Below are positions 7,064-60,668 of a stretch of 64,000 bases of DNA, piece after piece. The position numbers and the translations under genes are program-made. The notes under the pieces are model-generated. The model did not search any database and was not told where the DNA came from. It worked only from the letters and a program-made list of their open reading frames with translations. Positions within the stretch are counted from its first letter, which is position 1, and each line of letters begins with the position of its first letter. Location: the NCBI RefSeq assembly GCF_000142905.1, contig NW_013657660.1, positions 272,056 to 336,055 of the forward strand, in the 5' to 3' direction. This stretch comes from Thecamonas trahens ATCC 50062. Lineage: Eukaryota > Protista > Apusomonadida.

Positions 7064-8577
7064 CTAACAGTTAGAAAAGCAAGCGCGAGCGTCGGTGATA
7101 CGGACCTCAAACTGGCCGTTGGGTCGCTCGATGACAAGGGCGGTGGGGAGGGCGATGAGCTGGGCCGGTGTCATGCGGCCCTTGAGCGCCTTCTTGAGAT
7201 TGTACAGTTGGCCGCGCATGACGGCCATCTGTGCATCAAAGATGTCCGAGTCGAACGAGGGGTCCTTCTGGAAGAGACGGCGGAGCTTGCGGACAAGGAG
7301 CTGGATCGAGTCGTGGGTGAGGAGCGGGGTAAGTTTGGTTCGGATCTCGGCCGAGAACGGGACGTCGGTCTGCGGCATGTCGGCCCAGCCGTACGGGTAC
7401 GAGCGGACGGCGTCCGGATGCTTGTATGGGAAGGCGAGCGAGTTGTCGATGGCGGCGACGGTAATTGGGGTGCCGAACGAGCCGGCAACTCGCGGCGAAG
7501 ATGCCGCGGCCGCGGTGTGTGCGCTGCTGGACCGGCCGTCGAGCTCATCGTCGGGCGCGTACGGCTCGAGCGCTGGGCCACTCATCGGAGTGCTCAGCAG
7601 AGGCTGTGACACGCCCGGATCACCTGGTAGGCTCCCGCCGGCCAGGTCGGTCTCGCCGAGCGGGTCGGCGCGGACGAGCCAGTTGTCGGAGCCACGGTCG
7701 GTGTTGCGGATGATGTAGTCAATGATGACGAGGCGCTCAAACTGGAGCTGGAACTCTTTGGAGGCGAGCTGCGCCGTCGACATACGCGGCAGCAGTTGGG
7801 TCGCCTCCTCGTAGCCCTCCATGAAGACTTGCAGCGAGCCGCGCTTGTGCGGGACCGGGGCTGACGCCCGGACGCCGCGTGCAAGTGACGGGCCGGGCGT
7901 CATTGACGAGCCTTCGTCGTCCGACTCGGCGCCATAGTCCGAGTAGCCGTTGAGAGAGTCGTCGCGGTCAAAGGCGCGGATGGGCGCGGCGGCGACGGGC
8001 TCACACCCGTCCGAGCCATCCGAGTACGAGGCGTCGAGGTCGAAAAGGTTCTGGTGCGACGACGGACGCGGCAAGACGCCGCCGGGGACTGCAAGATGTG
8101 AGTGGGCCGGCGACTCAGCGTCGCTGGCGTGGTCGAGATACGGGCTGACAGCAGTCGGCACGGCCGCCAGCTGGTCGTAGTCGTAGTTGAACACTTCTGA
8201 GGCGAGCGAGACGACTCTTGTGTGCGGGACGATCGAGAGATTAAAGTGCTTGTCGACGATGGAGGCGCCAGCCTCGGAAAGGTGGCCCTGGTTCGGCGGG
8301 AGGCAGCCGCGGCCAAAGCAGCAGAACATGATGTTGCGGTGGAACCACTTGAGCCACTTGGGGTTGTTCTTGTCGTACGGCCCCTCGTCAAACGGCTTAA
8401 AGACGCCGAGGATCTTGCCCGATGCGCCACGCACAAAGTACGTTCCCGAGGATCCCTGCGCAACTCGCGTCGGATGAATGCCTTTCGCCATCGCCACTTT
8501 GACCTTGCCCAGAATTCGCCCCAGCATGTTGGTAGCCTCGTGTGACGACTCGAGGAGCGACGACCACCGCAGGCCGT

Positions 8578-8614
<37 letters not shown>

Positions 8615-8824
8615 CGCAGGCCCCGCAGACGCCTCGCCGTCCCCAGCGGCCTTGAAAGACTGCTGCAGCGAAAAGGTGGCCGTCCGTGCCCGCGCCCGCC
8701 GCGCCCGCCGCCCACGCTTGTCCTTACGCCTCCGTGGCACCGACGCCGACGGTTGCGCGCCCGAGCCCTTGCCGACTCCGGCCCCGCGCCGCAGCCTCTG
8801 TCGCCTTGACTCTCCGCCCTGCAT
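7064..8824 (-). CDS. PI4K2: Phosphatidylinositol 4-kinase type II
   Basis: QGSSGTYF, GVFKPFDEGPY, palmitoylation cluster CCFGRGCL, GSLQVF, DYIIRNTDRGSDNWL, AAIDNSLAFPYKHPD. Confidence 0.95.
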
Positions 8825-9165
8825 GCCCGTCAGCCGTTACACTGCTCTGCCGCTGACTCTCGAGCTCCAGTCCTGGTCGTCAAACTCTGCTGCCCGTCTG
8901 CCGTCAACTGCTCGCCCGAGTGGTGGAGGAGGGCGTGGAAGGCGGCGAGAGGTGGCGATCGGATCGCAGCCACAGCCGAAGGTCAATTCCACAGGGAGGT
9001 GGGATTGGAAGTTGGGGCAGGGCAGGGGGGAAGGGCTACTATTTTCTAAATATTTTGAACAAACCTTGCCGGGTCGCGCCCCAACCAGAGCCTTCCATTC
9101 GCCCCTCCGTATTCCTTGCGTTCTCTCAGTAGAAGCAGCACTCGTCGCCAGCAACAACCGTTCGC

Positions 9166-9768
9166 ATGGATTCCAACACCGACAGCCGAGACCAGGTCCC
9201 GACACAGGGCGCGCCGGACGAGGCCATGCTGGCGCACATCCGCGCTTCGGTCGAGGCTGTCGCCGCCGAGACCTTTGAGCGGCTCTCGGCGGCCCACGAG
9301 GCCGCCTCCGAAGACGCGCTTGTGGCCAAGTGGCGCCGGCTGGCCGACGAGCGGACGGCCGAGCTGCAGGCGCGCGAGGCTGCTAGTGATCCAGCCCGCT
9401 GGCAGCGCCGCGCCCGCCCCATGCCGCCGGCCCCGCCAGCTCGCCTTGATCCGGCTCTGTACTCGGTGTACGTGGCCGACCGGCCGCCGCTGCCGCGCAC
9501 AGTCGACGCCGCGCGCGCTTTGCATCCGCACTCGCACCCGCATCCGGCCCCTGCCCGCTTGGATCTGGTAGCGCAGCTCTGCGATGAGAACGAGCATCTT
9601 CGGTCGACGGTCGGTGTGCAGGCGGCCGAGATCGATGCGCTCCGCGCCCGGGTCCGGGAGCTCGAGCGCTCCGAGTCCAACCTCCGCTCCGGCTTCCTCG
9701 ACCTGACCGACGCCTACCGCGACGCCGTGGCGCGGCTTGACTCCGCGAACACCGGCTCCGAGCCGTAG
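9166..9768 (+). CDS. Hypothetical coiled-coil protein
   Basis: 200-aa ATG ORF with GC3-rich codons like neighbouring genes and heptad-rich C-terminus (LCDENEHLRSTV...LRARVRELERSESNLR). Confidence 0.6.
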   Translation: MDSNTDSRDQVPTQGAPDEAMLAHIRASVEAVAAETFERLSAAHEAASEDALVAKWRRLADERTAELQAREAASDPARWQRRARPMPPAPPARLDPALYSVYVADRPPLPRTVDAARALHPHSHPHPAPARLDLVAQLCDENEHLRSTVGVQAAEIDALRARVRELERSESNLRSGFLDLTDAYRDAVARLDSANTGSEP

Positions 9769-9770
9769 CC

Positions 9771-10721
9771 TCACAGCACCACACACTCGTTGCCGGGTAC
9801 CATCGCCGACTTGTAAGTCATCTCGTCGCAGTAAAGGAGCTCTCTCGGGGCGACCACTACGCTCGCCGGCCGCATCTCTGCCAGCCACGCCCGTGCTGCC
9901 GCCCCGGCCGCCGCCAGCTCGGCCAGCTGCACCTTGCGATCCAGATCGCCCACATCGGCTACTGTTGGCCAGCCGACAATCCGCGCAAGGCTCGAGTGGA
10001 CGATGTATGTCGGCTGCTTGTGCGGGAGCGGGCGTCCTGCTGCTTGCGCCAGTGCGCGGCGTAGAGCCTCGGGACTTCCGGTGACAGGCCGCCACAGGGC
10101 GAGCACAACACCAGCGGCGTCAATTACCACGTCGTGAAGCTCGAGAACGAGCCCATCCAGAGCCGACCTGGCACCGGCCGCCGCCAGCGCGGCCGCTTCG
10201 GCGGCCACAGCCTCGGTCGAGCCCAGCGGGAACGGCTCGTCCGGCGACGAGAGGAGTGCGAGGGTGATGTGGAGCGCGGCCCGCGGATTGACAAAGATGT
10301 GCGCCGAGCACGGCGCGGCGACCATGACCCGGCGGAGATTGTCGGCCAGCTCCGCCAGTACAGCGCCGGCGGGCGTCGCCCCGATGCCTGCCACCACAAA
10401 TCGCGCGGCATGGGCGTTCACAACACGCGGCGGGTGGCTGCGCAGAGCGCCTGCGCCGGCGTCCCACATCCGTGCACCCTCGGCAATGACGAGCTCGCGC
10501 ACGATGCGCTGTCCCGCTAATCGAGCATACAGCCTCGCCCTTTGCCACTCTGCATACGCCGGCACCCGTAGGGCCACCTCTGCCGCCAGCGGCTCGAACA
10601 TCGGCACACTCGGTCCCGCCCACAGCGCCACAGCCACTACAGCCACCGCCACCGCCACCGCCACACCCCATCCTGTGCCTGCCACCTGCCACCGGTCGCC
10701 GCGTCCGCTGTGTCTGCCCAT
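9771..10721 (-). CDS. 2H phosphoesterase superfamily protein with N-terminal signal anchor
   Basis: Two HxT/S motifs (ALHITLA; IVHSSLAR) about 90 aa apart; hydrophobic stretch WGVAVAVAVAVVAVALW. Start at 10721 is inferred. Confidence 0.65.
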   Translation of the reverse strand: MGRHSGRGDRWQVAGTGWGVAVAVAVAVVAVALWAGPSVPMFEPLAAEVALRVPAYAEWQRARLYARLAGQRIVRELVIAEGARMWDAGAGALRSHPPRVVNAHAARFVVAGIGATPAGAVLAELADNLRRVMVAAPCSAHIFVNPRAALHITLALLSSPDEPFPLGSTEAVAAEAAALAAAGARSALDGLVLELHDVVIDAAGVVLALWRPVTGSPEALRRALAQAAGRPLPHKQPTYIVHSSLARIVGWPTVADVGDLDRKVQLAELAAAGAAARAWLAEMRPASVVVAPRELLYCDEMTYKSAMVPGNECVVL

Positions 10722-10830
10722 GCCACGCACCCGCCACGCAGAGCCCGATTTCCAGCTACAGCGACAGGTGTTGCTCCAGCACCAGCACCAGCACCAGCAC
10801 CAGCAACACTCGACTCCGCCACCAACAGCC

Positions 10831-12302
10831 ATGGACGGTCCGTCGTCAATGGCCGACATGGCTGCGCAATGGACACCCGACGCCACTGCCGGCTGCCGGG
10901 TCGGGGTGCTGGACCCGGCTGCGGGTCTCGACCAGGTCGACGTCTGGCTGGCAGACGCTCTCGCCACCGCTGGCCCCCACCCCACCCGCACCCGCACCCG
11001 CATCCGCACCCACATCCGTACGCGGATGGCGACGAGGACGAGGATTTCCGCCATTGCAGTCCGCATGTACTGGTGGCGCTTGATTTTGATCAGACGCTCA
11101 CTACCCACACTGTGGTCGACGGCGTGAGGCAGTACGCGCTGCGCGGTGGCGAAGCCTCGAGGGCATGGCTGCACTCGCTGCCTGATCGTGGCGTCGACAC
11201 GGTTGTCGTCACCGCGGCGCCGGCGTCGGTCGGCTCGGCGGCGGCTGTCCGTGCTGACATGGCTCGCATCGGTGTCGCTGATCTTTTTGCCTGCACCGCC
11301 CGTGATGCGGCCCACGGAGCTGCCGTCGCTGCCGCGGTCGCTGGCTATCTCGCGCCGACGTTCGACTCGCCGCAGAGCGCGCTACTGCGGACAATGACCG
11401 CGTTCATGCTCTGCTCGCCGCGCCGCGGCTGTGACTTGCATCGTGTTGGCCGCTCAAACTTTGCCCTTGTGGACGAGACTACCATCTCCTTTGCACTCGC
11501 CGCGCCCGACGGCTCGACTTGGTCGGCTCGCCAGCTGATCACCCTCTCGCCCGACTCGGCGCCGGTGTGGGATGCGCTCCAGCCGGCCACTGCCGTTGCC
11601 ATCTATCTGGCGCATCTCGATGCTCGTGGCCCGCCGCTGATGCCCGCGGCCGCGCCGGTGCCCGACGATAGGCTCTTTGTTCGCTGGCATGACTCGGAGG
11701 GCGAGCCGCTACTCCCGTTTACCTCGGCCGGCGAGATGGTGTCTTGGTTGGAGGAGCACCTCGTCGGCCCTGCTGGTCTCGACGCCGTCGTCCCTCCGCC
11801 AGTCCTCAAATCGCTCTTCTGGCCCGACGCTGCCGTCATCAACACCGTTGACGACATCGGAGTCGCCTCATCGGGCCGCCTGCTCTGTGCCCGCTACAAC
11901 AAGCCCGAGGCTGTCGAGGCCTACGTCAACGCCTGGCGGTTCCCAGTCCCACTTACATCGGCTCATCCCTCGCCAACTCCGCTCGAGCCTGATGCGCTCC
12001 CGCACGTCGACACCATCATCTTTGTCGATGACAACTCGGACAACGTCGTCAAGATGTTCCTCCACTTTGCCGCCAAGCACGCCCACCATCTCCGCCACAC
12101 CCCGCACCACGACCCCTCTGCCCCGCGCATCATCTCGCTCCTCTACCCGCCGCCAGCATCCGGCCGTGCCGAGGCTTCGGATCCGTACTTCCGCGCCCTC
12201 CTCGACGCCCTCGTCGCCGGCCAGTTATCAACCCCACAGCCCGCTATCTCGTCTGACCGCGACCCCAACCATGACCATACTCCCGATCCAACCCCACAGT
12301 AA
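10831..12302 (+). CDS. HAD-superfamily phosphatase-like protein; probable -1 frameshift near 10980
   Basis: Motif I LVALDFDQTLT, motif II VVVTA, motif III K (YNKPEA), motif IV IIFVDDNSDN. The N-terminal ATG ORF joins in a C-run/His-Pro repeat. Confidence 0.7.
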
Positions 12303-12562: not shown

Positions 12563-15500
12563 ATGGCCGAGCCGGGCAGGGCGTCGGCCGCGCCGGACGA
12601 CAGGCTGGGCTCGGACTCGGACTCGTGGGCATCTTCCGCATCGGACTCGGAGGCGAGACCAGAAGCAGAAGGATCGTGGAGCGGCTCCGGACTCGGATCT
12701 TCTGCCGCTCTCCAGCCGTCGGGTCGGACTGTGGTGCTCGAGGGCCTTCGAATGGAGTACCCCGGCCCAGACGAGCCGCTAGGAGACCGCAGAACGGCGC
12801 TCGACGACTCGCTTGTCACCTCGTTTGCCATGGCGGCGCCCGGAAGCCTCCTGCGACTGACGTACTGCTCGGTTGAGACCAAGCCGTGGCTTGCTTCCGA
12901 GCTGGATGCTTCTGCCGGAAGATGGGCTGCGGCCAACGTCGAGGCCGGCATCACCGGCGTCCTCGTCTACGTCGCCGGCCTGTTCTTCCACGTTCTCGAA
13001 GGCCCGGCCCGCGCCGTCAACGCCCTCTACCTCCGCATTGCCCGGGACGAGCGCCACGGTGAGTGCTTTGTCATCAATCTGGAAACCGCGCCGCTCGGCG
13101 ACCGGCTGTACAGCGAGTTCATCTTTCAGCGCGCCTCGTCGCAGCCGCAGGTCTACACCATCCTCAAGAACGTCCTCGCCTCGCTCTCTTCATCATACCA
13201 AATCCTGGAGCGCTACCTCCCGCCTGTAGTGCTTTACCAGCTCAAGCAGGGTCTCAACCCGTTTGACTGTCAGCCGCGCATCGTCGATGCTCTTGTTGTC
13301 TTTGTCGGCCTCACCAACACACAGCCGGCCTCGGCTAAGTGGCTCTCCGATGCCCACTATCCCACTTTTATCGTCTTGCTCTCCGAGCTCTACGAGCACG
13401 TCACCTCGTCCATCGTCCGCGCTGGTGGCGAGGTTGTCAAGTTTATCGGTAAGGACGTCATGGTCTGCTTTCCCGAGGCCGACGTTCTCCCCGCCCTCCA
13501 CGCCCTTCACAACCTGCATGTCCTCCTCACCGTCCTCTGCGACCGCTCGTCGCTGCCTGGTGCCTCGGTTGCCATGGGCGCCTGCGCCGGTCCGGTCGTT
13601 GAGCTCAACATCGGCTCGGTCGACTTTGAGAAGCTCGACTACACCCTCCTCGGCAACGTCGTCAACACGGCTTCGCGCTTCAAGTCGCTTGCTGCCTCGC
13701 TCGGCCACGATTTGGTTGTGGCGCCCTCCGTCGCGGAACTGATTGCTCCGGGCGGCGCGTCGCTGCCGGCCCAGCCTGGGGCCCAGCTCGCAGCAGCAGA
13801 GTGGACGCTCGTCTCGCTCGGCGAGCACGTCCTCAAAGGACTCGCCGACCCGCAGCCTGCCTTTACCGTCGTTCCGCCTTCGACCCGCGCCAACAGCTGG
13901 CCAGCGCTACCGCCGCGCGAGCTCCTGCCTCCTCGCCCGCGCCTCCTGGACATTGCTGCCACCCACTCTTCCTCCTTTGACCTCCTCCGCACCACCATCG
14001 AGCTCACCTCGTCGCCCAAGTCGCCACCAGTTCGCCTCGATGCCTCGGGTCGGTACTCGATCGACCACTCGATCGCTCAGGTTGCCGACCGTGTCGACCA
14101 CGCACTCGACAACGCCTCGTTCCGGCTCTCGACTTCGATGCTCTCGTCGGGCTCGCCGTCGAGCTCGCCGTCGGGCGACACGCCGCTCCCGCGGCTTCCT
14201 TCTATTGACCTCTCCGACACCCCGCGATACGTCGCGCTCGTTGCCCCGGACATCCGCGGCGATGCGGCGTATCCGCGCTCACCGGACAAGACTGACCTTG
14301 CCCGCGCGCTACAGGTCACACTCTCCGAGCCCAAACTGCCGGCGTCGCCGATTCGTGGCCTTCAGCACTTGGCCAACCGGCGGATGGGCGGCTCGTTTGA
14401 CTCACGTCGGCATGTCGACGTCGCCTCACTCCTAGCTACCGGATGCGACCGCGCTGGCGCGTCTGCGCCGACCTCTGCTTCGATGCCGATTCAGGCACGT
14501 TCGGTTGCTGCAGCCGCCCGCGCCCGCTCGCGCGCCCGCAAGGCCTCGGTCTCGACGCCGCCGCCAATCGGCATGCTGCGTGTCACGTACGTCTCGCTTG
14601 CTTCATCGTCGATGCCGTCGTCAGAGTGGGCGAGCCTCGTCGACAAGTGGCGGATGCGGAACCTCAAGCGTGGCATCACCGGCCAGCTGCTCCGCTCGTC
14701 ATCGGGCGAGGTGCTGATGCAAATCCTAGAAGGACCCGCCAGTGCCGTCGATGCACTCTTTGCCCGCATTGCTGCTGACCCGCGCCACCACCACGTCACC
14801 CGCGTGGGCTCGGAGACCATTGTCAGCCGCGAGCACCACGGGTTCTCGGCCGAAGTCTTCTCCTTTGACTCGACTGGGCCGTCGGGCGAGCTCGTGGTCG
14901 AGCACATGATCCGGCTCATGCTCGACACCATGCTCACCTCGTACGTCTCGCTCCGCGGCTACACCCAGAAAAAGGTACTGGACATCCTGCAGACCGGTGC
15001 CAATCCGCTCGCCCACTACTCGCACCCGGTCCGGGCTGTCATCCTTGTCACCGACATCCTCGACTTTACCCGCATCACCGAGGTTGTCGGCCTCAACGCT
15101 GAGTTGGTTGTCGAGCTCATCAACACCTTTCTGGAAATCGTCATTTCCGCCGTCGAGCGCGGTGGCGGCTCGGTCAACAAGCTCATCGGCGACTGCGTCG
15201 TCGCCTTTTTCCCGCCACATTCCCGGTGGAACGCGGTCCATGTCGCGCTGGACATTCAGCGCCGGCTTGCCGCTGCACGAGCCGCCGCCGGCGAGGATTC
15301 GATCCTCTCGATCATGTACTCGGGCGTTGGCCTCGCGTCCGGCCGGGTCTTCCTCGGCAACATCGGCGTTACCCGCCTCGACTTTGCCATGATCGGCGCT
15401 GCTGTTGACGACGCCCATGATCTCGAGTCGGCCACTCGCTCTGTTGATGCTGCCCTCCTCATCTCCCCGAATCTCTTCCGTGAACTGGAAGGCAACCCGC

Positions 15501-16570
15501 CAGAGCCGCCGTCGCCGTCGCCCAGCGCGCCGCCGACCATCAGTGCGCTCCCGCTAGTCCGGCTTGGGCTCGGCGAGAGCCACGCCTACACCGTCGACTC
15601 GCCCGACGCCCGCTGGGACGTGGCTGATGTTCAGGCCACCGTCAATGCCCACCTTGAAGGGCCGGTCTTTGCCCTCCCGTCGGCGCTCGACTCGATTGCC
15701 GACCTCGCCAACAGCTCACCCGGTGAGGGCCGGACCCAGCCGATGTCGCTCCACGCGCTTAGTGTGTCGCCGATTGTCAAGTCGGGCGCATCGTCGCTCG
15801 ACGACGACGGGTCGACGCGGTCGGACGGCGACGATACCGGCCGCGACGGCGACGACGACGACGACGCGGTCGATCTCAACGAGCTGCTCTCGGACGATGT
15901 CTCGTTCATGACAATGGTCACAGCGTCGGGCATGCTCGACTCGCCGTCGGCCGACGCGGTCGACCCGAAGCTCGAGGTGACGCAGTCTGGCGACTCGGGT
16001 GAGTTTACTATCAACTCGGTCCAGCGGTCGCAATCGTTCGACATGCGGCGGCAGCCGCATCGGTCGATCTCGCGCCGCCGCGCAGGCTTCCTCACGCTGG
16101 GACGTTCCGGCAGCCCGGGCAGCGGACTCGGTTCGCCGGGCGGCCGCGAGGACTCACCGTCAGCGTCACGACTTGCCGCGGCCGTTGCCGGGCGGCGACT
16201 CTCAGTCTCGCTCTCGCCGCCGCGGCAGCTGAGCCGCAGCATGCGACACACGCCGGCGCGAGCACCGTGGCAGCAGTCGCCGACGCACTGGCGCGACTCG
16301 CCGGCGTCGTCGTCGGTCTCGCCGCACCGCGGCACGGTCTCGCTGCTCTCCGAGACGTTGCCGGCGCGGGCGTACTCGTCGGGGGAGCCCGGCGAGTTTG
16401 GATCGGCCACTGTCTCCAATCTCTTTGCCTCGCTCTCTGGCCGGCGGCTCGGCCGCTCCAGTGACTCGTCGCGAGTCGGCTCAGAGCTCCGCGAGCTGGC
16501 CGGGCGGCTTGCACAGGCACTGCCGCCACTCAAGAAGCACACCAAGAGTCAGTCGGGCCCGGCGACGTGA
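12563..16570 (+). CDS. PAC: Photoactivated adenylyl cyclase, Euglena PAC-type (BLUF1-CYC1-BLUF2-CYC2)
   Basis: BLUF1 RLTYCS..N..GITGVL..FFHVLEGP..RIARDERH; CYC1 VVKFIGKD..DYTLLGNVVNTASR; BLUF2 RVTYVS..RN..GITG..MQILEGP..RIAADPRH; CYC2 LVTDILDFT..VNKLIGDCV..GNIG; S/P/R-rich linker and tail. Confidence 0.93.
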   Translation: MAEPGRASAAPDDRLGSDSDSWASSASDSEARPEAEGSWSGSGLGSSAALQPSGRTVVLEGLRMEYPGPDEPLGDRRTALDDSLVTSFAMAAPGSLLRLTYCSVETKPWLASELDASAGRWAAANVEAGITGVLVYVAGLFFHVLEGPARAVNALYLRIARDERHGECFVINLETAPLGDRLYSEFIFQRASSQPQVYTILKNVLASLSSSYQILERYLPPVVLYQLKQGLNPFDCQPRIVDALVVFVGLTNTQPASAKWLSDAHYPTFIVLLSELYEHVTSSIVRAGGEVVKFIGKDVMVCFPEADVLPALHALHNLHVLLTVLCDRSSLPGASVAMGACAGPVVELNIGSVDFEKLDYTLLGNVVNTASRFKSLAASLGHDLVVAPSVAELIAPGGASLPAQPGAQLAAAEWTLVSLGEHVLKGLADPQPAFTVVPPSTRANSWPALPPRELLPPRPRLLDIAATHSSSFDLLRTTIELTSSPKSPPVRLDASGRYSIDHSIAQVADRVDHALDNASFRLSTSMLSSGSPSSSPSGDTPLPRLPSIDLSDTPRYVALVAPDIRGDAAYPRSPDKTDLARALQVTLSEPKLPASPIRGLQHLANRRMGGSFDSRRHVDVASLLATGCDRAGASAPTSASMPIQARSVAAAARARSRARKASVSTPPPIGMLRVTYVSLASSSMPSSEWASLVDKWRMRNLKRGITGQLLRSSSGEVLMQILEGPASAVDALFARIAADPRHHHVTRVGSETIVSREHHGFSAEVFSFDSTGPSGELVVEHMIRLMLDTMLTSYVSLRGYTQKKVLDILQTGANPLAHYSHPVRAVILVTDILDFTRITEVVGLNAELVVELINTFLEIVISAVERGGGSVNKLIGDCVVAFFPPHSRWNAVHVALDIQRRLAAARAAAGEDSILSIMYSGVGLASGRVFLGNIGVTRLDFAMIGAAVDDAHDLESATRSVDAALLISPNLFRELEGNPPEPPSPSPSAPPTISALPLVRLGLGESHAYTVDSPDARWDVADVQATVNAHLEGPVFALPSALDSIADLANSSPGEGRTQPMSLHALSVSPIVKSGASSLDDDGSTRSDGDDTGRDGDDDDDAVDLNELLSDDVSFMTMVTASGMLDSPSADAVDPKLEVTQSGDSGEFTINSVQRSQSFDMRRQPHRSISRRRAGFLTLGRSGSPGSGLGSPGGREDSPSASRLAAAVAGRRLSVSLSPPRQLSRSMRHTPARAPWQQSPTHWRDSPASSSVSPHRGTVSLLSETLPARAYSSGEPGEFGSATVSNLFASLSGRRLGRSSDSSRVGSELRELAGRLAQALPPLKKHTKSQSGPAT

Positions 16571-16574
16571 TGGC

Positions 16575-17978
16575 TCACGAGGCTGGCTGCCCGTCAATCC
16601 GGAGTCGCGCGCCCTCGGCGCCCGACACGTACTGATGGTCGACGTCCCAGCCGGCAGCCGCAAGCGCGGCAGTAAACTCCGAGTCAGACCAAGTCCGCAA
16701 CCGCTCCACCAGCGCCGTGGCGCTGGCCCGCAACGCCCGCGCGTGCAGATAGCCTCGGAGTACCTGTGGCGCGGTAGCGTCGACGTCAAACCAGAGTGCA
16801 ACCGAGCCGTCAGGCCTTGGGTGTACAATGTACTTGTGTGCATCAAAGACATCCAGGCTCGACGGCTGGGCTTGGATCTCATTCCAGTCGCTGTGGGTGA
16901 GTGCAGGATCGATGTCGATGCCGGTATCGCCGCGGTAGCGGGAAAGGAACGACTCGCGTGCGGCGACGGCGGCTGGCGCGGCGATGGCTGCGAGGGACGG
17001 CGAAGCGGCGGGCGAGGCAACAAGCAGTGGCTCAAAGGCGAGGTCGGCTCGCTGCTGATCAAAAGTGGTTAGCACGGCGTGCGCTGACGAGCGCGCCGCG
17101 GCGTAGACCGTGAGCGCCGAGAGCGGGAGAAAGGCGGAGAAGGCGACCCAGGTGGCATCCGATCCGATGGCTGAAGAGAGAGCAACGCCAAGGCCGGTGC
17201 CAATCAGTGAGGCCGAGATGGCCTGCGACGTCGCCTTGCCAGTCACGTCGCCGAGGTTCTCGGAGATGGCAAAGGCCCTGTTGAGCTGAGCGCGCGAGGC
17301 GCCGGTGGCGAGGTAGGCCACGTTCTTGCCGATGTTTGCCACTGAGGCAAGCGGGAGGAAGAGAGCCGGGACAAGTGGGGCCAGGACCTCGAGCCCGGTC
17401 GAGAGCTGCAGCAGGAGCGTCGACGAGTAGCGGTGGTACTTGGGCTGGGCGTCAAACGATCGCGACGAGAAGGCGGCGTACAGCACGCCACCAAGCTGCC
17501 CGATTCCGTCCTTGAGCACAAAGTTGAGCGCTCCAGCAAGCGGAATGGCTCCAGCGCCAAGGCCAACAGCAAATAGCAGGCCCTGCATTGAGAGCACGCC
17601 CGTCATCGTTCCGGCGACGAGGTGGACGGCGTGCCATGCCGAGTACGGGATGTACCCGGCGCCGACGCTCGCCGGAAAGCCGCGCGGGAGCAGGACCTCA
17701 CGACCATGGGCTCCGATTCGAGTCATCAGCCCATGGTCGTGTTCTCTCCCGTCGGCGCTCTCGTCAGCCGCGCTCCCGCTCTCCGGCCAGACCTTGATCC
17801 ACCGCCCGCCTCGCCGCTGTGCCACCCTCGGGGCATTGGCCGTGGTCTTGGCCGGCCTGCCGCCTGCTCCTGCTCCTGTTCCTGCTCCTTCTGCCGCTAA
17901 GGCACCGGTTGCAAAGCAAGGACCGGTTGTCAGCTGTGTTAAGTGCGGTGCAATCGAACGGAGCAGCGGGCGGAGCAT
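16575..17978 (-). CDS. RUS1: RUS1 / DUF647 (ROOT UVB SENSITIVE, C16orf58) family protein
   Basis: LLPRGFPASVGAGYIPYSAW, ALNFVLKDGIGQLG, FDAQPK, FLPLASVANIGKN, ENLGDVTGKATSQ; N-terminus resembles a mitochondrial presequence. Confidence 0.92.
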   Translation of the reverse strand: MLRPLLRSIAPHLTQLTTGPCFATGALAAEGAGTGAGAGGRPAKTTANAPRVAQRRGGRWIKVWPESGSAADESADGREHDHGLMTRIGAHGREVLLPRGFPASVGAGYIPYSAWHAVHLVAGTMTGVLSMQGLLFAVGLGAGAIPLAGALNFVLKDGIGQLGGVLYAAFSSRSFDAQPKYHRYSSTLLLQLSTGLEVLAPLVPALFLPLASVANIGKNVAYLATGASRAQLNRAFAISENLGDVTGKATSQAISASLIGTGLGVALSSAIGSDATWVAFSAFLPLSALTVYAAARSSAHAVLTTFDQQRADLAFEPLLVASPAASPSLAAIAAPAAVAARESFLSRYRGDTGIDIDPALTHSDWNEIQAQPSSLDVFDAHKYIVHPRPDGSVALWFDVDATAPQVLRGYLHARALRASATALVERLRTWSDSEFTAALAAAGWDVDHQYVSGAEGARLRIDGQPAS

Positions 17979-18099
17979 GATGGAGGTGTGGGGGGGGTGT
18001 GGGGGAGGGGGTGGGGTGGTGCCGCTAGTTGAGTAGCCGCAGCCGAACGTGTCAGCGGTGGAGGCATTTTCCATTGCCCGGGGGGGGGCTATTGGTGGG

Positions 18100-18150
18100 G
18101 GCCATCGCATGGCTATTGCTAGGCCATCGCATGGCTATTGCTAGGCCATT
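18100..18150. repeat. 22-bp direct tandem repeat (GGCCATCGCATGGCTATTGCTA) x2 plus a partial copy
   Basis: Read directly, upstream of RUS1. Confidence 0.8.
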
Positions 18151-18409: not shown

Positions 18410-18613
18410 NNNNNNNNNNNNNNNNNNNNNNNNNNNNNNNNNNNNNNNNNNNNNNNNNNNNNNNNNNNNNNNNNNNNNNNNNNNNNNNNNNNNNNNNNNN
18501 NNNNNNNNNNNNNNNNNNNNNNNNNNNNNNNNNNNNNNNNNNNNNNNNNNNNNNNNNNNNNNNNNNNNNNNNNNNNNNNNNNNNNNNNNNNNNNNNNNNN
18601 NNNNNNNNNNNNN
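18410..18613. other. Assembly gap (N run)
   Basis: Run of n, preceded by poly-G. Confidence 1.
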
Positions 18614-28802: not shown

Positions 28803-30794
28803 CTATGTGGTTGGTTGGGTAGCCTCTGGCTCTGCGATTAGATTGTGGGTGCACGGGGTGCGATGCCGCGTGGGCGAACGGGGCGGGCAGAAGTGCCTGT
28901 GGAGGGCTTGGAGGGCATGGGCGGCGGGCCGGCGGCTGGCGGCGGCGGGGCGACAACGAGGCGANNNNNNNNNNNNNNNNNNNNNNNNNNNNNNNNNNNN
29001 NNNNNNNNNNNNNNNNNNNNNNNNNNNNNNNNNNNNNNNNNNNNNNNNNNNNNNNNNNNNNNNNNNNNNNNNNNNNNNNNNNNNNNNNNNNNNNNNNNNN
29101 NNNNNNNNNNNNNNNNNNNNNNNNNNNNNNNNNNNNNNNNNNNNNNNNNNNNNNNNNNNNNNNNNNNNNNNNNNNNNNNNNNNNNNNNNNNNNNNNNNNN
29201 NNNNNNNNNNNNNNNNNNNNNNNNNNNNNNNNNNNNNNNNNNNNNNNNNNNNNNNNNNNNNNNNNNNNNNNNNNNNNNNNNNNNNNNNNNNNNNNNNNNN
29301 NNNNNNNNNNNNNNNNNNNNNNNNNNNNNNNNNNNNNNNNNNNNNNNNNNNNNNNNNNNNNNNNNNNNNNNNNNNNNNNNNNNNNNNNNNNNNNNNNNNN
29401 NNNNNNNNNNNNNNNNNNNNNNNNNNNNNNNNNNNNNNNNNNNNNNNNNNNNNNNNNNNNNNNNNNNNNNNNNNNNNNNNNNNNNNNNNNNNNNNNNNNN
29501 NNNNNNNNNNNNNNNNNNNNNNNNNNNNNNNNNNNNNNNNNNNNNNNNNNNNNNNNNNNNNNNNNNNNNNNNNNNNNNNNNNNNNNNNNNNNNNNNNNNN
29601 NNNNNNNNNNNNNNNNNNNNNNNNNNNNNNNNNNNNNNNNNNNNNNNNNNNNNNNNNNNNNNNNNNNNNNNNNNNNNNNNNNNNNNNNNNNNNNNNNNNN
29701 NNNNNNNNNNNNNNNNNNNNNNNNNNNNNNNNNNNNNNNNNNNNNNNCTGGGCCGGGGCAGGAGCGCGGGTGGCGAGTGGCGGCGGCGGAGCGGCGACGC
29801 GGGGTGGAAGTGGTGGGGCGGGAGAGGCAGCCGGCGGCGGGAGAGGAGGCGACTCGTTGACCGACATGCGTGCGGTGTTGGAGACGAGGGCGTCGAGATC
29901 AAAGTCATCGTCGTCATCAGATTCGTCGTCGAGGTAGTCGACGCCAGCAGTGGCGTGATCCGACGAGTAGCTCGGGGACGGGGCGGACGCCGACGCCGCC
30001 GAATACTTTGTAGACGAGGGGCAGAACTTGAGGGTTATGAGCTCGGTCACAAACTGGGCTACAAAACCGGTGTTGCGGACCTCTGTGCCGAGATCAGTGG
30101 TGCGGAGAATGTTGGGCCCGATAACAAGAGCAATGTTGGACGGAGTCATGAGATTGTCGTCCGAGTGCTGCGAGACTTTGCGGAAGAAGGAGAGAAGATA
30201 CTTGAGGGTGGTGCGGGCGAGCGGGTCGAGCGACTGCATGAGCTCGCGGACGGCGTCGCGCTTGGCGTCCGGGTCGTTGACAGTCCGCTGCATGTCGATA
30301 CAGACCGGGTAGAGCTCGTACGGGATGAGCGGGGTAGGCAGCTCGCGGAGGTAGTCCTTGAGCGTCTTGGCCATGGTATGCTCGTCGCGGATCGAGTCGA
30401 GGTTGACCATGCCGTTGGTCTCATACGCCTTGCGGATGACCTTGGCCTCTGCAAAGTCACCAGCCTTGCGGAAGAGGCCCGGGAGCTTGATGCACGACTC
30501 GCGCGAGAGGAACTGTACCGTCTGCTTGATAATCGGCGGCACGTTGTCCTTGTAGCCCTTGGACCGCGCCCACGCCATGTGGTCCTTCATCTCCACCCCA
30601 AAGGTGCAACCCCTAGTTGCCGCCACCGCCCCTGCAGCCTTGCCACCTCCGGACGATGACCGGCCCTACACACTCCACATGAGGGGGGAGGGGAGGAAGG
30701 GGAGGGTGAGGGTGTGTGGAGAGGGAGGAAGGAGGGGAAGGGGGAGGAGGGGGGGGGCCGTGCGTACCTTCTTCGACTTGCGCCCAAACACCAT
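28803..30794 (-). CDS. RhoGAP protein with Pro-rich C-terminus; exon 1 30794-30768, intron to 30666; 3' part interrupted by gap
   Basis: TFGV, VPPII, GLFRKAG (Arg finger), LKDYLRELPTPLIP, NLMTPSNIALVIGPNIL; 3' end uncertain. Confidence 0.85.
28965..29747. other. Assembly gap (N run)
   Basis: Run of n. Confidence 1.
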
Positions 30795-60568: not shown

Positions 60569-60668
60569 NNNNNNNNNNNNNNNNNNNNNNNNNNNNNNNN
60601 NNNNNNNNNNNNNNNNNNNNNNNNNNNNNNNNNNNNNNNNNNNNNNNNNNNNNNNNNNNNNNNNNNNN
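60569..60668. other. Assembly gap (N run)
   Basis: Run of n flanked by poly-C. Confidence 1.

What the first reader, a model, noticed from the sequence alone, without database searches (positions are those of the whole stretch)
12563..16570. Euglena-type tandem BLUF-cyclase (photoactivated adenylyl cyclase) in an apparently non-euglenoid flagellate
Seen: an intronless 1335-aa ORF with order BLUF1 (about 12848-13130), class III cyclase 1 (about 13290-13870), S/P-rich linker, BLUF2 (about 14573-14860), cyclase 2 (about 15035-15600) and a disordered tail. Known: F1-C1-F2-C2 is the architecture of Euglena PACalpha/beta, which drive photophobic responses; bacterial PACs (bPAC, OaPAC) have a single BLUF-cyclase unit. 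Seen: neighbouring genes have short conventional GT-AG introns and high gene density unlike Euglena, and include flagellar genes. Inference: a blue-light to cAMP sensory system in a lineage not known for photobehaviour, from either an ancient origin or eukaryote-to-eukaryote transfer, and a possible single-chain optogenetic tool.
Basis: partly seen in the sequence, partly recalled or inferred. Interest (0 to 1): 0.92.

Follow-up and report, generated by a model that had tools for sequence, protein, structure and literature searches.

The report
Tandem blue-light adenylyl cyclase in Thecamonas
The marine gliding flagellate Thecamonas trahens, a relative of animals and fungi, carries one gene for a Euglena-type blue-light-activated cAMP-making enzyme, which makes it the obvious untested candidate for the blue-light avoidance recently seen in a related apusomonad.

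Summary
Window 12563-16570 (+) is an uninterrupted 1335-aa ORF with BLUF1, cyclase 1, a disordered linker, BLUF2, cyclase 2 and a low-complexity tail. It is the only BLUF gene in the genome.

I verified the genome as Thecamonas trahens ATCC 50062, an apusomonad and not a euglenoid. The gene sits among ordinary eukaryotic genes and has host-like composition.

Both BLUF-cyclase units align end to end with the solved bacterial photoactivated cyclases OaPAC and bPAC.

The two cyclase domains are complementarily degenerate:
- C1 has lost both metal-binding Asp but keeps Lys, Thr, Asn and Arg.
- C2 keeps both Asp but has lost Thr, Asn and Arg.

Every tandem PAC I found shares this overall pattern, including Euglena PAC alpha/beta, phagotrophic euglenids and a diplonemid. 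An AlphaFold model packs C1 and C2 like human soluble adenylyl cyclase and AC9. One intramolecular ATP site is therefore expected.

BLUF2 keeps the Tyr-Asn-Gln triad. BLUF1 has His in place of Gln. Both lack the Trp-x-Met motif.

The nearest kin are a diplonemid protein and environmental sequences, at about 30% identity.

The gene's existence was mentioned in passing in a 2024 preprint on apusomonad photophobic behaviour, but I found no characterisation. Other first-reader notes of this scan cover this same stretch.

Verdict: a new member of a known kind. Light activation is inferred, not shown.

The parts
12563..16570 (+). Complete intronless ORF of 1335 aa plus stop: tandem photoactivated adenylyl cyclase homologue (F1-C1-F2-C2)
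   Evidence: An identical protein is in NCBI, UniRef and EukProt.
12563..12835 (+). N-terminal low-complexity region (aa 1-91), rich in Ser, Ala, Gly and Asp
   Evidence: No Pfam match lies in this region of the whole-protein scan.
12836..13141 (+). BLUF1 (aa 92-193). Y101 and N125 are kept. The photoactive Gln is replaced by H143 (codon CAC, 12989-12991). Trp-x-Met is replaced by F186-x-F188.
13142..13270 (+). Helical alpha3/handle connector between BLUF1 and cyclase 1 (aa 194-236). It aligns with the OaPAC connector.
   Evidence: helices at model residues 115-136 and 141-148
13271..13873 (+). Class III cyclase homology domain C1 (aa 237-437). Both metal Asp are lost (G249, K297). The substrate Lys K293, T361 and the transition-state N368 and R372 are kept.
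13886..14566 (+). Disordered Ser/Pro/Ala/Arg-rich linker (aa 442-668), far longer than in the relatives
   Evidence: (pLDDT below 50 for model residues 362-588). Pfam found nothing in aa 467-660 of it.
14558..14872 (+). BLUF2 (aa 666-770). The triad Y676, N700, Q720 is intact. Trp-x-Met is replaced by F761-x-A763.
14873..15007 (+). Helical alpha3/handle connector between BLUF2 and cyclase 2 (aa 771-815)
   Evidence: helices at model residues 696-720 and 723-730
15008..15658 (+). Class III cyclase homology domain C2 (aa 816-1032). Metal Asp D831 and D877 and Lys K873 are kept. Thr, Asn and Arg are lost (A942, D949, D953).
15659..16567 (+). C-terminal low-complexity tail (aa 1033-1335), Ser-rich with an acidic patch and one RRxS motif at aa 1211
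   Evidence: (no family)

Best explanation
The gene encodes a soluble, single-chain, blue-light-activated adenylyl cyclase of the tandem (Euglena/diplonemid) PAC type in the apusomonad Thecamonas trahens.

Proposed mechanism, step by step:
1. A flavin held in BLUF2 (Y676, N700, Q720) absorbs blue light and undergoes the usual BLUF hydrogen-bond switch. This is inferred.
2. The change passes through the alpha3/handle helices, which are conserved in both units. This is inferred by homology to OaPAC and bPAC.
3. It reaches an intramolecular head-to-tail dimer of the two cyclase domains. This geometry is predicted.
4. That dimer has only one complete catalytic site. C2 gives the two Mg-binding Asp (D831, D877). 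C1 gives the adenine-selecting K293 and T361 and the transition-state N368 and R372. The residues are shown; ATP to cAMP is inferred from the Lys/Thr pair.
5. BLUF1 (Gln to His) is probably a photochemically altered or inert structural partner.
6. The cAMP feeds a very large cyclic-nucleotide network in this organism. It plausibly drives a blue-light photophobic or avoidance response like the one reported for the apusomonad Podomonas. This last step is speculative.

On origin, the protein belongs with a diplonemid-type clade of tandem PACs. The tandem layout was most likely inherited from that clade's ancestor, probably by eukaryote-to-eukaryote transfer, rather than built anew in Thecamonas.
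For: - Architecture: Pfam finds BLUF twice and Guanylate_cyc twice, in the order F1-C1-F2-C2.
- Homology to solved PACs: each unit aligns over BLUF, connector and cyclase with OaPAC and bPAC, at E 7e-37 to 8e-43. The AlphaFold unit matches 4yut and 5m2a with target TM 0.85.
- Active-site table: C1 reads G249/K297 at the metal positions but keeps K293, T361, N368 and R372. C2 keeps D831, K873 and D877 but reads A942, D949, D953. The same broad complementary split appears in the 11 other distinct tandem PACs tabulated, with a few single-position exceptions. By eye it also appears in Petalomonas.
- Geometry: the AlphaFold model has pTM 0.76 although 227 residues are disordered. Its C1 plus C2 superpose as one body on single-chain pseudo-heterodimeric cyclases. 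Human sAC 4clp gives Z 30.1, rmsd 3.4 A over 399 residues. AC9 9u3r gives Z 30.7, rmsd 3.1 A over 386 residues. The aligned model range is about 83-934.
- Host identity and native status. It is the only BLUF gene in the 28.7-Mb genome.
- Downstream parts: at least 65 cNMP-binding matches and 14 PDE matches in the genome.
- Kinship: a whole-library HMMER search puts the diplonemid Rhynchopus euleeides on top (E 3.8e-73, 33% identity), followed by environmental tandem proteins and Euglena PACs. In the careful tree, unit 2 joins the Rhynchopus and environmental unit 2s with support 98/95. C1 shares an 8-column deletion with only those same proteins.
- Behaviour context: blue-light photophobic response in an apusomonad, with the receptor unidentified (bioRxiv 10.1101/2024.09.02.610796).
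Against: - There is no biochemical evidence for flavin binding, light activation or product.
- Both BLUF domains lack the Trp-x-Met motif of strand beta5, which nearly all single-unit PACs keep (Trp in 67 of 70, Met in 61 of 70). The Met is held to relay the signal in other BLUF proteins (my own knowledge). Euglenid F2 domains also align poorly here.
- BLUF1 has His for the essential Gln.
- H143 is one base away from a Gln codon, and the reads I could lay did not cover it. An assembly error is not excluded.
- Evidence of expression is weak. Three near-exact short contigs were found in two metatranscriptome runs of one study, and these could be carried-over DNA.
- The C1-C2 packing is a prediction. 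The complex test with controls was not available.
- Placement of unit 1 is weakly supported (70/39).
- The AU test disfavours an independent duplication in Thecamonas but does not reject it (delta lnL 24.4, p 0.084).
- No orthologue was found in any other apusomonad.
Confidence: 0.7

Rival explanations
1. The protein is a cyclase whose BLUF domains no longer transmit light. It would be a constitutive or otherwise regulated adenylyl cyclase, for example one controlled by redox state through the flavin or by phosphorylation of the long linker and tail.
For: Trp-x-Met is lost in both BLUF domains (F186/F188 and F761/A763), and Gln is replaced by His in BLUF1. The branches leading to both units are long, 1.06 to 1.30 changes per column. 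The linker and tail are long, disordered and Ser-rich, with RKAS and RRLS motifs.
Against: BLUF2 keeps Tyr, Asn and Gln and scores 73.6 bits against Pfam BLUF. The connector helices and the one complete active site are conserved. Euglenid F2 domains also lack a clean Trp-x-Met alignment. Euglena PAC is light-activated (Iseki et al. 2002, from my own knowledge and as cited).
Confidence: 0.17
2. The tandem layout arose independently in Thecamonas. A single-unit PAC of bacterial or heterolobosean type duplicated, and the complementary decay of C1 and C2 is convergent with Euglenozoa.
For: The AU test does not formally reject a Thecamonas u1+u2 clade (p 0.084). The backbone of the unit tree is weak, and bacterial single units interleave with the tandem clades. 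Complementary decay has happened more than once in class III cyclases, as in the animal membrane cyclases and soluble cyclase (my own knowledge; their fold matches are).
Against: Unit 2 groups with the diplonemid and environmental unit 2s at 98/95. In the best tree unit 1 is sister to their unit 1s. Only these C1 domains share the 8-column deletion. Holding u1 and u2 together costs 24.4 log-likelihood units. The same domain (C1) lost the metal Asp in every lineage.
Confidence: 0.1
3. The gene is not native to Thecamonas. It would be contaminating euglenozoan DNA in the assembly.
For: The closest relatives are euglenozoan. No other apusomonad orthologue was found.
Against: The gene lies in a 525-kb contig that also carries the Thecamonas trahens gene AMSG_04649. 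It is flanked on both sides by ordinary eukaryotic genes. Its GC (0.663) and GC3 (0.795) match the window (0.65) and other ORFs of the contig, whose GC3 is 0.77 to 0.86. Identity to any euglenozoan protein is only about 30%.
Confidence: 0.02

Closest known systems
Euglena gracilis photoactivated adenylyl cyclase PAC alpha/beta (Iseki et al. 2002).
   Same: The F1-C1-F2-C2 order is the same. Both have a BLUF-connector-cyclase unit repeated twice. The complementary split is the same: C1 lacks both metal Asp and keeps Lys/Thr/Asn/Arg, while C2 keeps Asp/Lys/Asp and lacks Thr/Asn/Arg.
   Different: Identity is only about 25-32%. The genome has one gene, not an alpha/beta pair. The linker is about 225 aa and the tail about 300 aa. 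BLUF1 has Gln to His. In the trees the euglenid units form clades of their own, apart from the Thecamonas/diplonemid-type units. Subunit assembly and location are unknown.
Predicted tandem BLUF-cyclase of the diplonemid Rhynchopus euleeides (EukProt EP01061_P005850; P0005), with environmental relatives P0006, P0007 and P0011
   Same: This is the best hit in 1.84 billion representatives (E 3.8e-73). It has the same architecture. Its unit 2 is in one clade with the Thecamonas unit 2 at 98/95. Its C1 shares the 8-column deletion.
   Different: These relatives keep Gln and Trp-x-Met in both BLUF domains and are much shorter, 688-853 aa. None has been characterised in the papers I could search.
Bacterial single-unit PACs: OaPAC (PDB 4yus, 4yut, 5x4t) and bPAC (5m2a, 5mbk)
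   Same: Each Thecamonas unit aligns with them from BLUF strand 1 to the end of the cyclase domain. The predicted unit matches their folds at TM 0.85.
   Different: Those are homodimers with two equivalent active sites and two equivalent sensors. Here the two halves are fused in one chain and specialised, leaving one site.
Single-chain pseudo-heterodimeric class III cyclases: human soluble adenylyl cyclase ADCY10 (4clp) and membrane AC9 (9u3r, 6r3q)
   Same: Two cyclase domains in one chain form one active site and one degenerate site. The model's C1 plus C2 superpose on them at Z about 30.
   Different: The roles are in reverse order: here the second domain carries the metal Asp. There is no BLUF in those enzymes. 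Sequence identity is 13-18%.
Single-unit eukaryotic PACs of Heterolobosea (Naegleria PACs from my own knowledge; Pharyngomonas kirbyi P0029 seen here)
   Same: A BLUF plus class III cyclase in a heterotrophic protist.
   Different: They have one unit only and fall among the bacterial-type single units, not with the tandem clades.

Membership tests
Tandem (Euglena-type) photoactivated adenylyl cyclase | Domain order BLUF1 - cyclase1 - BLUF2 - cyclase2 in one polypeptide | tested here: met
   Pfam and iterative HMM limits
Tandem (Euglena-type) photoactivated adenylyl cyclase | Complementary cyclase halves: C1 without the metal Asp but with Lys/Thr/Asn/Arg, and C2 with the metal Asp but without Thr/Asn/Arg | tested here: met
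   Column table over 12 distinct tandem proteins and 70 single units.
Tandem (Euglena-type) photoactivated adenylyl cyclase | Phylogenetic placement of each unit with the corresponding unit of other tandem PACs | tested here: inconclusive
   Unit 2 joins the diplonemid-type unit 2s at 98/95. Unit 1 is their sister at only 70/39 but shares a C1 deletion with them. One clade of all unit 1s, euglenids included, is not rejected (AU p 0.244). A Thecamonas-only duplication is not rejected either (p 0.084).
Tandem (Euglena-type) photoactivated adenylyl cyclase | Two paralogous subunits (alpha and beta) forming a heterotetramer, as in Euglena | tested here: not met
   The genome-wide BLUF search finds only this gene. 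This feature defines the Euglena complex, not the wider family.
Tandem (Euglena-type) photoactivated adenylyl cyclase | Blue-light-stimulated cAMP synthesis | not testable with these tools
   Needs an enzyme assay in dark versus about 450 nm light.
BLUF photosensor domain (PF04940) | Conserved Tyr, Asn and Gln around the flavin | tested here: met
   BLUF2 has Y676, N700 and Q720. BLUF1 has Y101 and N125 but H143 in place of Gln, so BLUF1 on its own does not meet this.
BLUF photosensor domain (PF04940) | Trp-x-Met on strand beta5, the signal relay | tested here: not met
   F186-x-F188 in BLUF1 and F761-x-A763 in BLUF2. Trp is present in 67 of 70 single units and Met in 61 of 70.
BLUF photosensor domain (PF04940) | Non-covalent flavin binding and a roughly 10-nm red-shifted photocycle | not testable with these tools
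   Needs spectroscopy of the purified domains.
Class III nucleotidyl cyclase (PF00211), adenylyl type | A complete set of catalytic residues at a head-to-tail dimer interface: two metal Asp, the substrate pair Lys plus Thr/Asp, and Asn and Arg | tested here: met
   The set is complete once across C1 plus C2. The predicted head-to-tail packing matches sAC and AC9 at Z about 30. The Lys/Thr pair is the one seen in OaPAC.

The most novel reading that the evidence does not exclude
This single gene is the photoreceptor behind blue-light photophobic gliding in apusomonads, the sister group of animals and fungi. Tandem PACs would then not be a euglenid invention tied to the plastid. They would be a wider family of heterotrophic marine flagellates (diplonemids, phagotrophic euglenids, apusomonads), either spread by eukaryote-to-eukaryote gene transfer or inherited from a very early eukaryote. 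BLUF1 with His in place of Gln, and the loss of Trp-x-Met, would then mark a BLUF-to-cyclase relay that works differently from the bacterial model systems.
Probability: 0.3. Interest if true: 0.78.

Novelty: new member of a known kind. Interest (0 to 1): 0.6.

Why it matters
A blue-light avoidance response was reported in 2024 for an apusomonad, with no receptor identified. This gene is the only BLUF protein of the one sequenced apusomonad genome and has a complete catalytic site. The question 'what senses blue light in the sister lineage of animals and fungi' therefore becomes a direct experiment.

The finding also widens the known range of tandem PACs from euglenids to diplonemids, phagotrophic euglenids and an apusomonad. 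As I recall it, an older idea held that PAC entered euglenids with the plastid. A family carried by heterotrophs argues against that idea.

For protein science, it is a natural single-chain PAC with one active site and one degenerate sensor, and so a natural experiment on how a BLUF signal reaches a cyclase.

The practical optogenetic value is uncertain, because compact bacterial PACs already exist.

Tried and rejected
- Complex prediction (unit 1 against unit 2 with controls) was not available. The C1-C2 pairing therefore rests on one AlphaFold model and its fit to sAC and AC9.
- The look-up of encoding contigs held no record for the protein itself.
- Expression: the only RNA runs found were two subsurface metatranscriptomes of one study with a 6-7% word share. 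Laying them gave three near-exact short contigs (13501-13784 and 16036-16412) and many 33-base low-complexity matches. This is too weak to claim transcription, and H143 is not covered.
- Taxon of the environmental relatives: the contigs (L005, L006, L007) are 3.5-6.7 kb, and their neighbours gave no useful family or Thecamonas match. The run id of L006 appears in no held paper. Their origin stays unknown.
- Metagenome scans: the alignment had no stretch conserved enough to search with. A scan with unit 2 alone found only distant cyclase-domain matches at 28-37% and no close orthologue.
- Kaushik et al. 2019, the BLUF survey cited for Thecamonas, is not held in the library. I could not see what it says about this protein.
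- Contamination by euglenozoan DNA was considered and rejected.
- Guanylyl cyclase specificity was considered and set aside, because the substrate pair is Lys/Thr as in OaPAC.
Multi-exon genes could have been missed.

Full report
**1. What is in the sequence**

Window 12563-16570 (+) is a single open reading frame of 1335 codons starting with ATG. Pfam finds BLUF twice and the class III cyclase domain twice. When the protein is cut into pieces, each of the four domains passes its curated cut-off on its own. The inter-domain linker and the C-terminal tail match nothing. An iterative HMM search gives these limits: BLUF1 aa 92-193, cyclase 1 aa 237-409, BLUF2 aa 666-770, cyclase 2 aa 816-1000. 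The same 1335-aa protein is already present in NCBI, UniRef and EukProt, so the public gene model is this ORF.

**2. Whose genome**

The window is G000:C20:272056-336055 of a 28.7-Mb assembly in 131 contigs. Earlier notes of this scan named Thecamonas trahens, and I tested that. An ORF on the same 525,314-bp contig, about 30 kb upstream of the window, is letter for letter XP_013758323.1 / AMSG_04649 of Thecamonas trahens ATCC 50062.

The PAC gene is native to this genome:
- Its GC (0.663) and GC3 (0.795) match the window (0.65) and other ORFs of the contig, whose GC3 is 0.77-0.86.
- It lies between ordinary eukaryotic genes: an ABCG-type transporter, LRR, PI3/PI4-kinase, WD40, protein kinases, RRM and E2.

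A genome-wide search finds no other BLUF domain.

**3. Relation to solved photoactivated cyclases**

Each BLUF-cyclase unit aligns with the cyanobacterial OaPAC and with Beggiatoa bPAC. The alignment runs from the first BLUF strand, through the connector helices, to the end of the cyclase domain. E-values are 8e-43 to 4e-33 for unit 2 and 7e-37 to 5e-32 for unit 1. These are therefore two copies of the whole PAC module, not a chance neighbourhood of two common domains.

**4. Active-site anatomy**

I aligned 94 BLUF-cyclase units and read the columns that correspond to the OaPAC residues.

| Position | C1 | C2 |
|---|---|---|
| Metal Asp 1 | G249 (lost) | D831 (kept) |
| Substrate Lys | K293 (kept) | K873 (kept) |
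| Metal Asp 2 | K297 (lost) | D877 (kept) |
| Substrate Thr | T361 (kept) | A942 (lost) |
| Transition-state Asn | N368 (kept) | D949 (lost) |
| Transition-state Arg | R372 (kept) | D953 (lost) |

In class III cyclases the active site lies at a dimer interface. One partner gives the two Asp and the other gives Lys, Thr/Asp, Asn and Arg (established knowledge of the family). A C1-C2 pair therefore has exactly one complete site and one dead site. The Lys/Thr pair is the one found in the adenylyl cyclase OaPAC, so cAMP is the expected product.

The same broad division of labour is seen in the 11 other distinct tandem proteins in the table: Euglena PAC alpha-like and PAC beta, other Euglena transcripts, the diplonemid protein and the environmental proteins. 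A few single positions depart from it. By eye it is also seen in Petalomonas. Single-unit proteins nearly always keep all the residues. An earlier first-reader note on this stretch (s1-756583) proposed this reading, and my table confirms it.

**5. Predicted geometry**

AlphaFold2 was run on the 966-residue core with a 65-row alignment. It gave mean pLDDT 76 and pTM 0.76, although residues 362-588 of the model (the linker) are disordered. Each unit matches OaPAC and bPAC at target TM about 0.85.

More telling is the fit to cyclases that carry both halves in one chain. C1 and C2 together superpose as one rigid body on these:
- human soluble adenylyl cyclase 4clp: Z 30.1, rmsd 3.4 A, 399 of 460 residues, model range 83-934;
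- AC9 9u3r: Z 30.7, rmsd 3.1 A, 386 residues.

The model thus puts C1 and C2 in the canonical head-to-tail dimer within one chain. This is a prediction only. The complex tool with controls was not available, and pairing between two chains is not excluded.

**6. The sensors**

BLUF2 keeps Tyr, Asn and Gln (Y676, N700, Q720). BLUF1 keeps Tyr and Asn but has His (H143) where the photoactive Gln should be. Among the tandem relatives, one environmental cluster has Glu there, and 2 of 70 single units have His.

Both domains lack the Trp-x-Met of strand beta5 (F186/F188 and F761/A763). The diplonemid-type relatives keep this motif in both domains, and most single units keep it too. Euglenid F2 domains also align poorly at this motif, so its loss need not abolish function.

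I read BLUF2 as the working sensor and BLUF1 as an altered or inert partner. H143 (CAC) is one base from a Gln codon, and no read I could lay covers it. Note s1-756627 of this scan had listed the same substitutions.

**7. Relatives and history**

A HMMER search of 1.84 billion representatives gave 42 proteins at E up to 1e-30. Of the 13 best hits (the gene's own protein set aside), 10 are long, and all 10 are tandem proteins. Their sources are:
- the diplonemid Rhynchopus euleeides (best, E 3.8e-73, 33% identity);
- four environmental proteins;
- Euglena stellata PAC beta;
- E. gracilis PAC alpha-like;
- other Euglena transcripts.

Tandem proteins of two phagotrophic euglenids were also found: Petalomonas cantuscygni, which ranks further down the list, and Entosiphon sulcatum, which came up as a cluster member. 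The roughly 350-aa hits are single units, for example from Pseudanabaena. One is from the heterolobosean Pharyngomonas.

In a careful maximum-likelihood tree of 58 units over 330 columns:
- Thecamonas unit 2 falls with the Rhynchopus and environmental unit 2s (98/95).
- Unit 1 is sister to their unit 1s, but weakly (70/39).
- The C1 domains of Thecamonas, Rhynchopus and two environmental proteins share an 8-column deletion found in no other unit.
- Euglenid units form their own clades.

A single clade of all unit 1s is not rejected (AU p 0.244). An independent duplication inside Thecamonas costs 24.4 log-likelihood units but is not formally rejected (p 0.084).

No closer relative exists in the protein collections or in the JGI metagenome contigs. 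My reading is that the Thecamonas gene is a divergent member of a diplonemid-type tandem PAC clade. With this patchy distribution, transfer between eukaryotes is more economical than descent from a common ancestor with many losses. Neither the direction nor the age is shown.

**8. Cellular context**

The genome holds at least 65 cNMP-binding domain matches, about 50 cyclase-domain matches and 14 class I phosphodiesterase matches. A cAMP signal would therefore find many targets.

Other candidate light sensors exist:
- two photolyase/cryptochrome genes;
- two microbial rhodopsins, one of them a histidine-kinase rhodopsin.

**9. What is already known**

A 2024 preprint reports a blue-light avoidance response in the apusomonad Podomonas kaiyoae, with speeding up, cell contraction and Ca2+ dependence. 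It states that no photoreceptor was identified. It also notes that the T. trahens genome suggests BLUF/PAC proteins, citing a 2019 BLUF survey (bioRxiv 10.1101/2024.09.02.610796). I could not read that survey.

No held paper links PAC with diplonemids or phagotrophic euglenids or describes this protein. The existence of the gene is therefore not new. The following are, as far as I could search, unreported:
- its anatomy, with one active site, a degenerate first sensor and the lost Trp-x-Met;
- its diplonemid-type kinship;
- the wider spread of tandem PACs among heterotrophic flagellates.

All of these are untested at the bench.

**10. Verdict**

It is out of date on apusomonad photobehaviour and too generous on two working sensors and on tool value.

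This is a new member of a known kind. Its interest is moderate to high because it turns an open behavioural question into a direct experiment.

Expression evidence is weak. Light activation is inferred from homology.

Noticed in passing
window 16575-18110 (-): The convergent neighbour ends 5 bases after the PAC stop codon. It is a 511-aa ORF of the UVB_sens_prot / RUS family (PF04884, E 2e-58), which Pfam names for UV-B sensitivity and vitamin B6 photoprotection. This is probably coincidence.
   Followed up: no
L009:1616-4840 (+) = G000:C11, about 8115-11339: A 1075-aa ORF with microbial rhodopsin, HisKA and response-regulator receiver domains. This is a histidine-kinase rhodopsin and another candidate light sensor of Thecamonas.
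   Followed up: partly
L010:1627-3297 (-) and L010:4080-5249 (+) = G000:C51, about 109100-112750: A photolyase/cryptochrome gene and a second microbial rhodopsin gene lie side by side, about 800 bases apart and divergently oriented. Two light-related genes are paired here.
   Followed up: partly
whole genome G000: The cyclic-nucleotide toolkit is very large for a 28.7-Mb genome: at least 65 cNMP-binding matches, about 50 class III cyclase-domain matches and 14 PDE matches. One further cyclase gene lies about 10 kb beyond the window's end, at G000:C20:345916-346476 (-).
   Followed up: no
P0005, P0002, P0164 (EukProt transcriptomes): Tandem F1-C1-F2-C2 PAC homologues occur in heterotrophs without plastids: the diplonemid Rhynchopus euleeides and the phagotrophic euglenids Petalomonas cantuscygni and Entosiphon sulcatum. 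I found no paper that mentions this.
   Followed up: partly
L005 (ENA ERZ23487347), L006 (Logan DRR659772), L007 (ENA ERZ27287412): Short environmental contigs carry the closest tandem relatives after Rhynchopus. L005 and L006 have GC 0.657, like Thecamonas. L006 also carries a weak match to a ciliary inner-protein family. The organisms are unknown.
   Followed up: partly
window 13501-13784 and 16036-16412: Two subsurface metatranscriptome runs of one study hold short contigs identical or nearly identical to this gene. Thecamonas trahens or a very close strain may therefore live in that habitat.
   Followed up: no
window 18410-18613, 28965-29747, 60569-60668: Runs of N (assembly gaps). The second explains the apparent GC dip at 28-30 kb in the composition profile.
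   Followed up: yes
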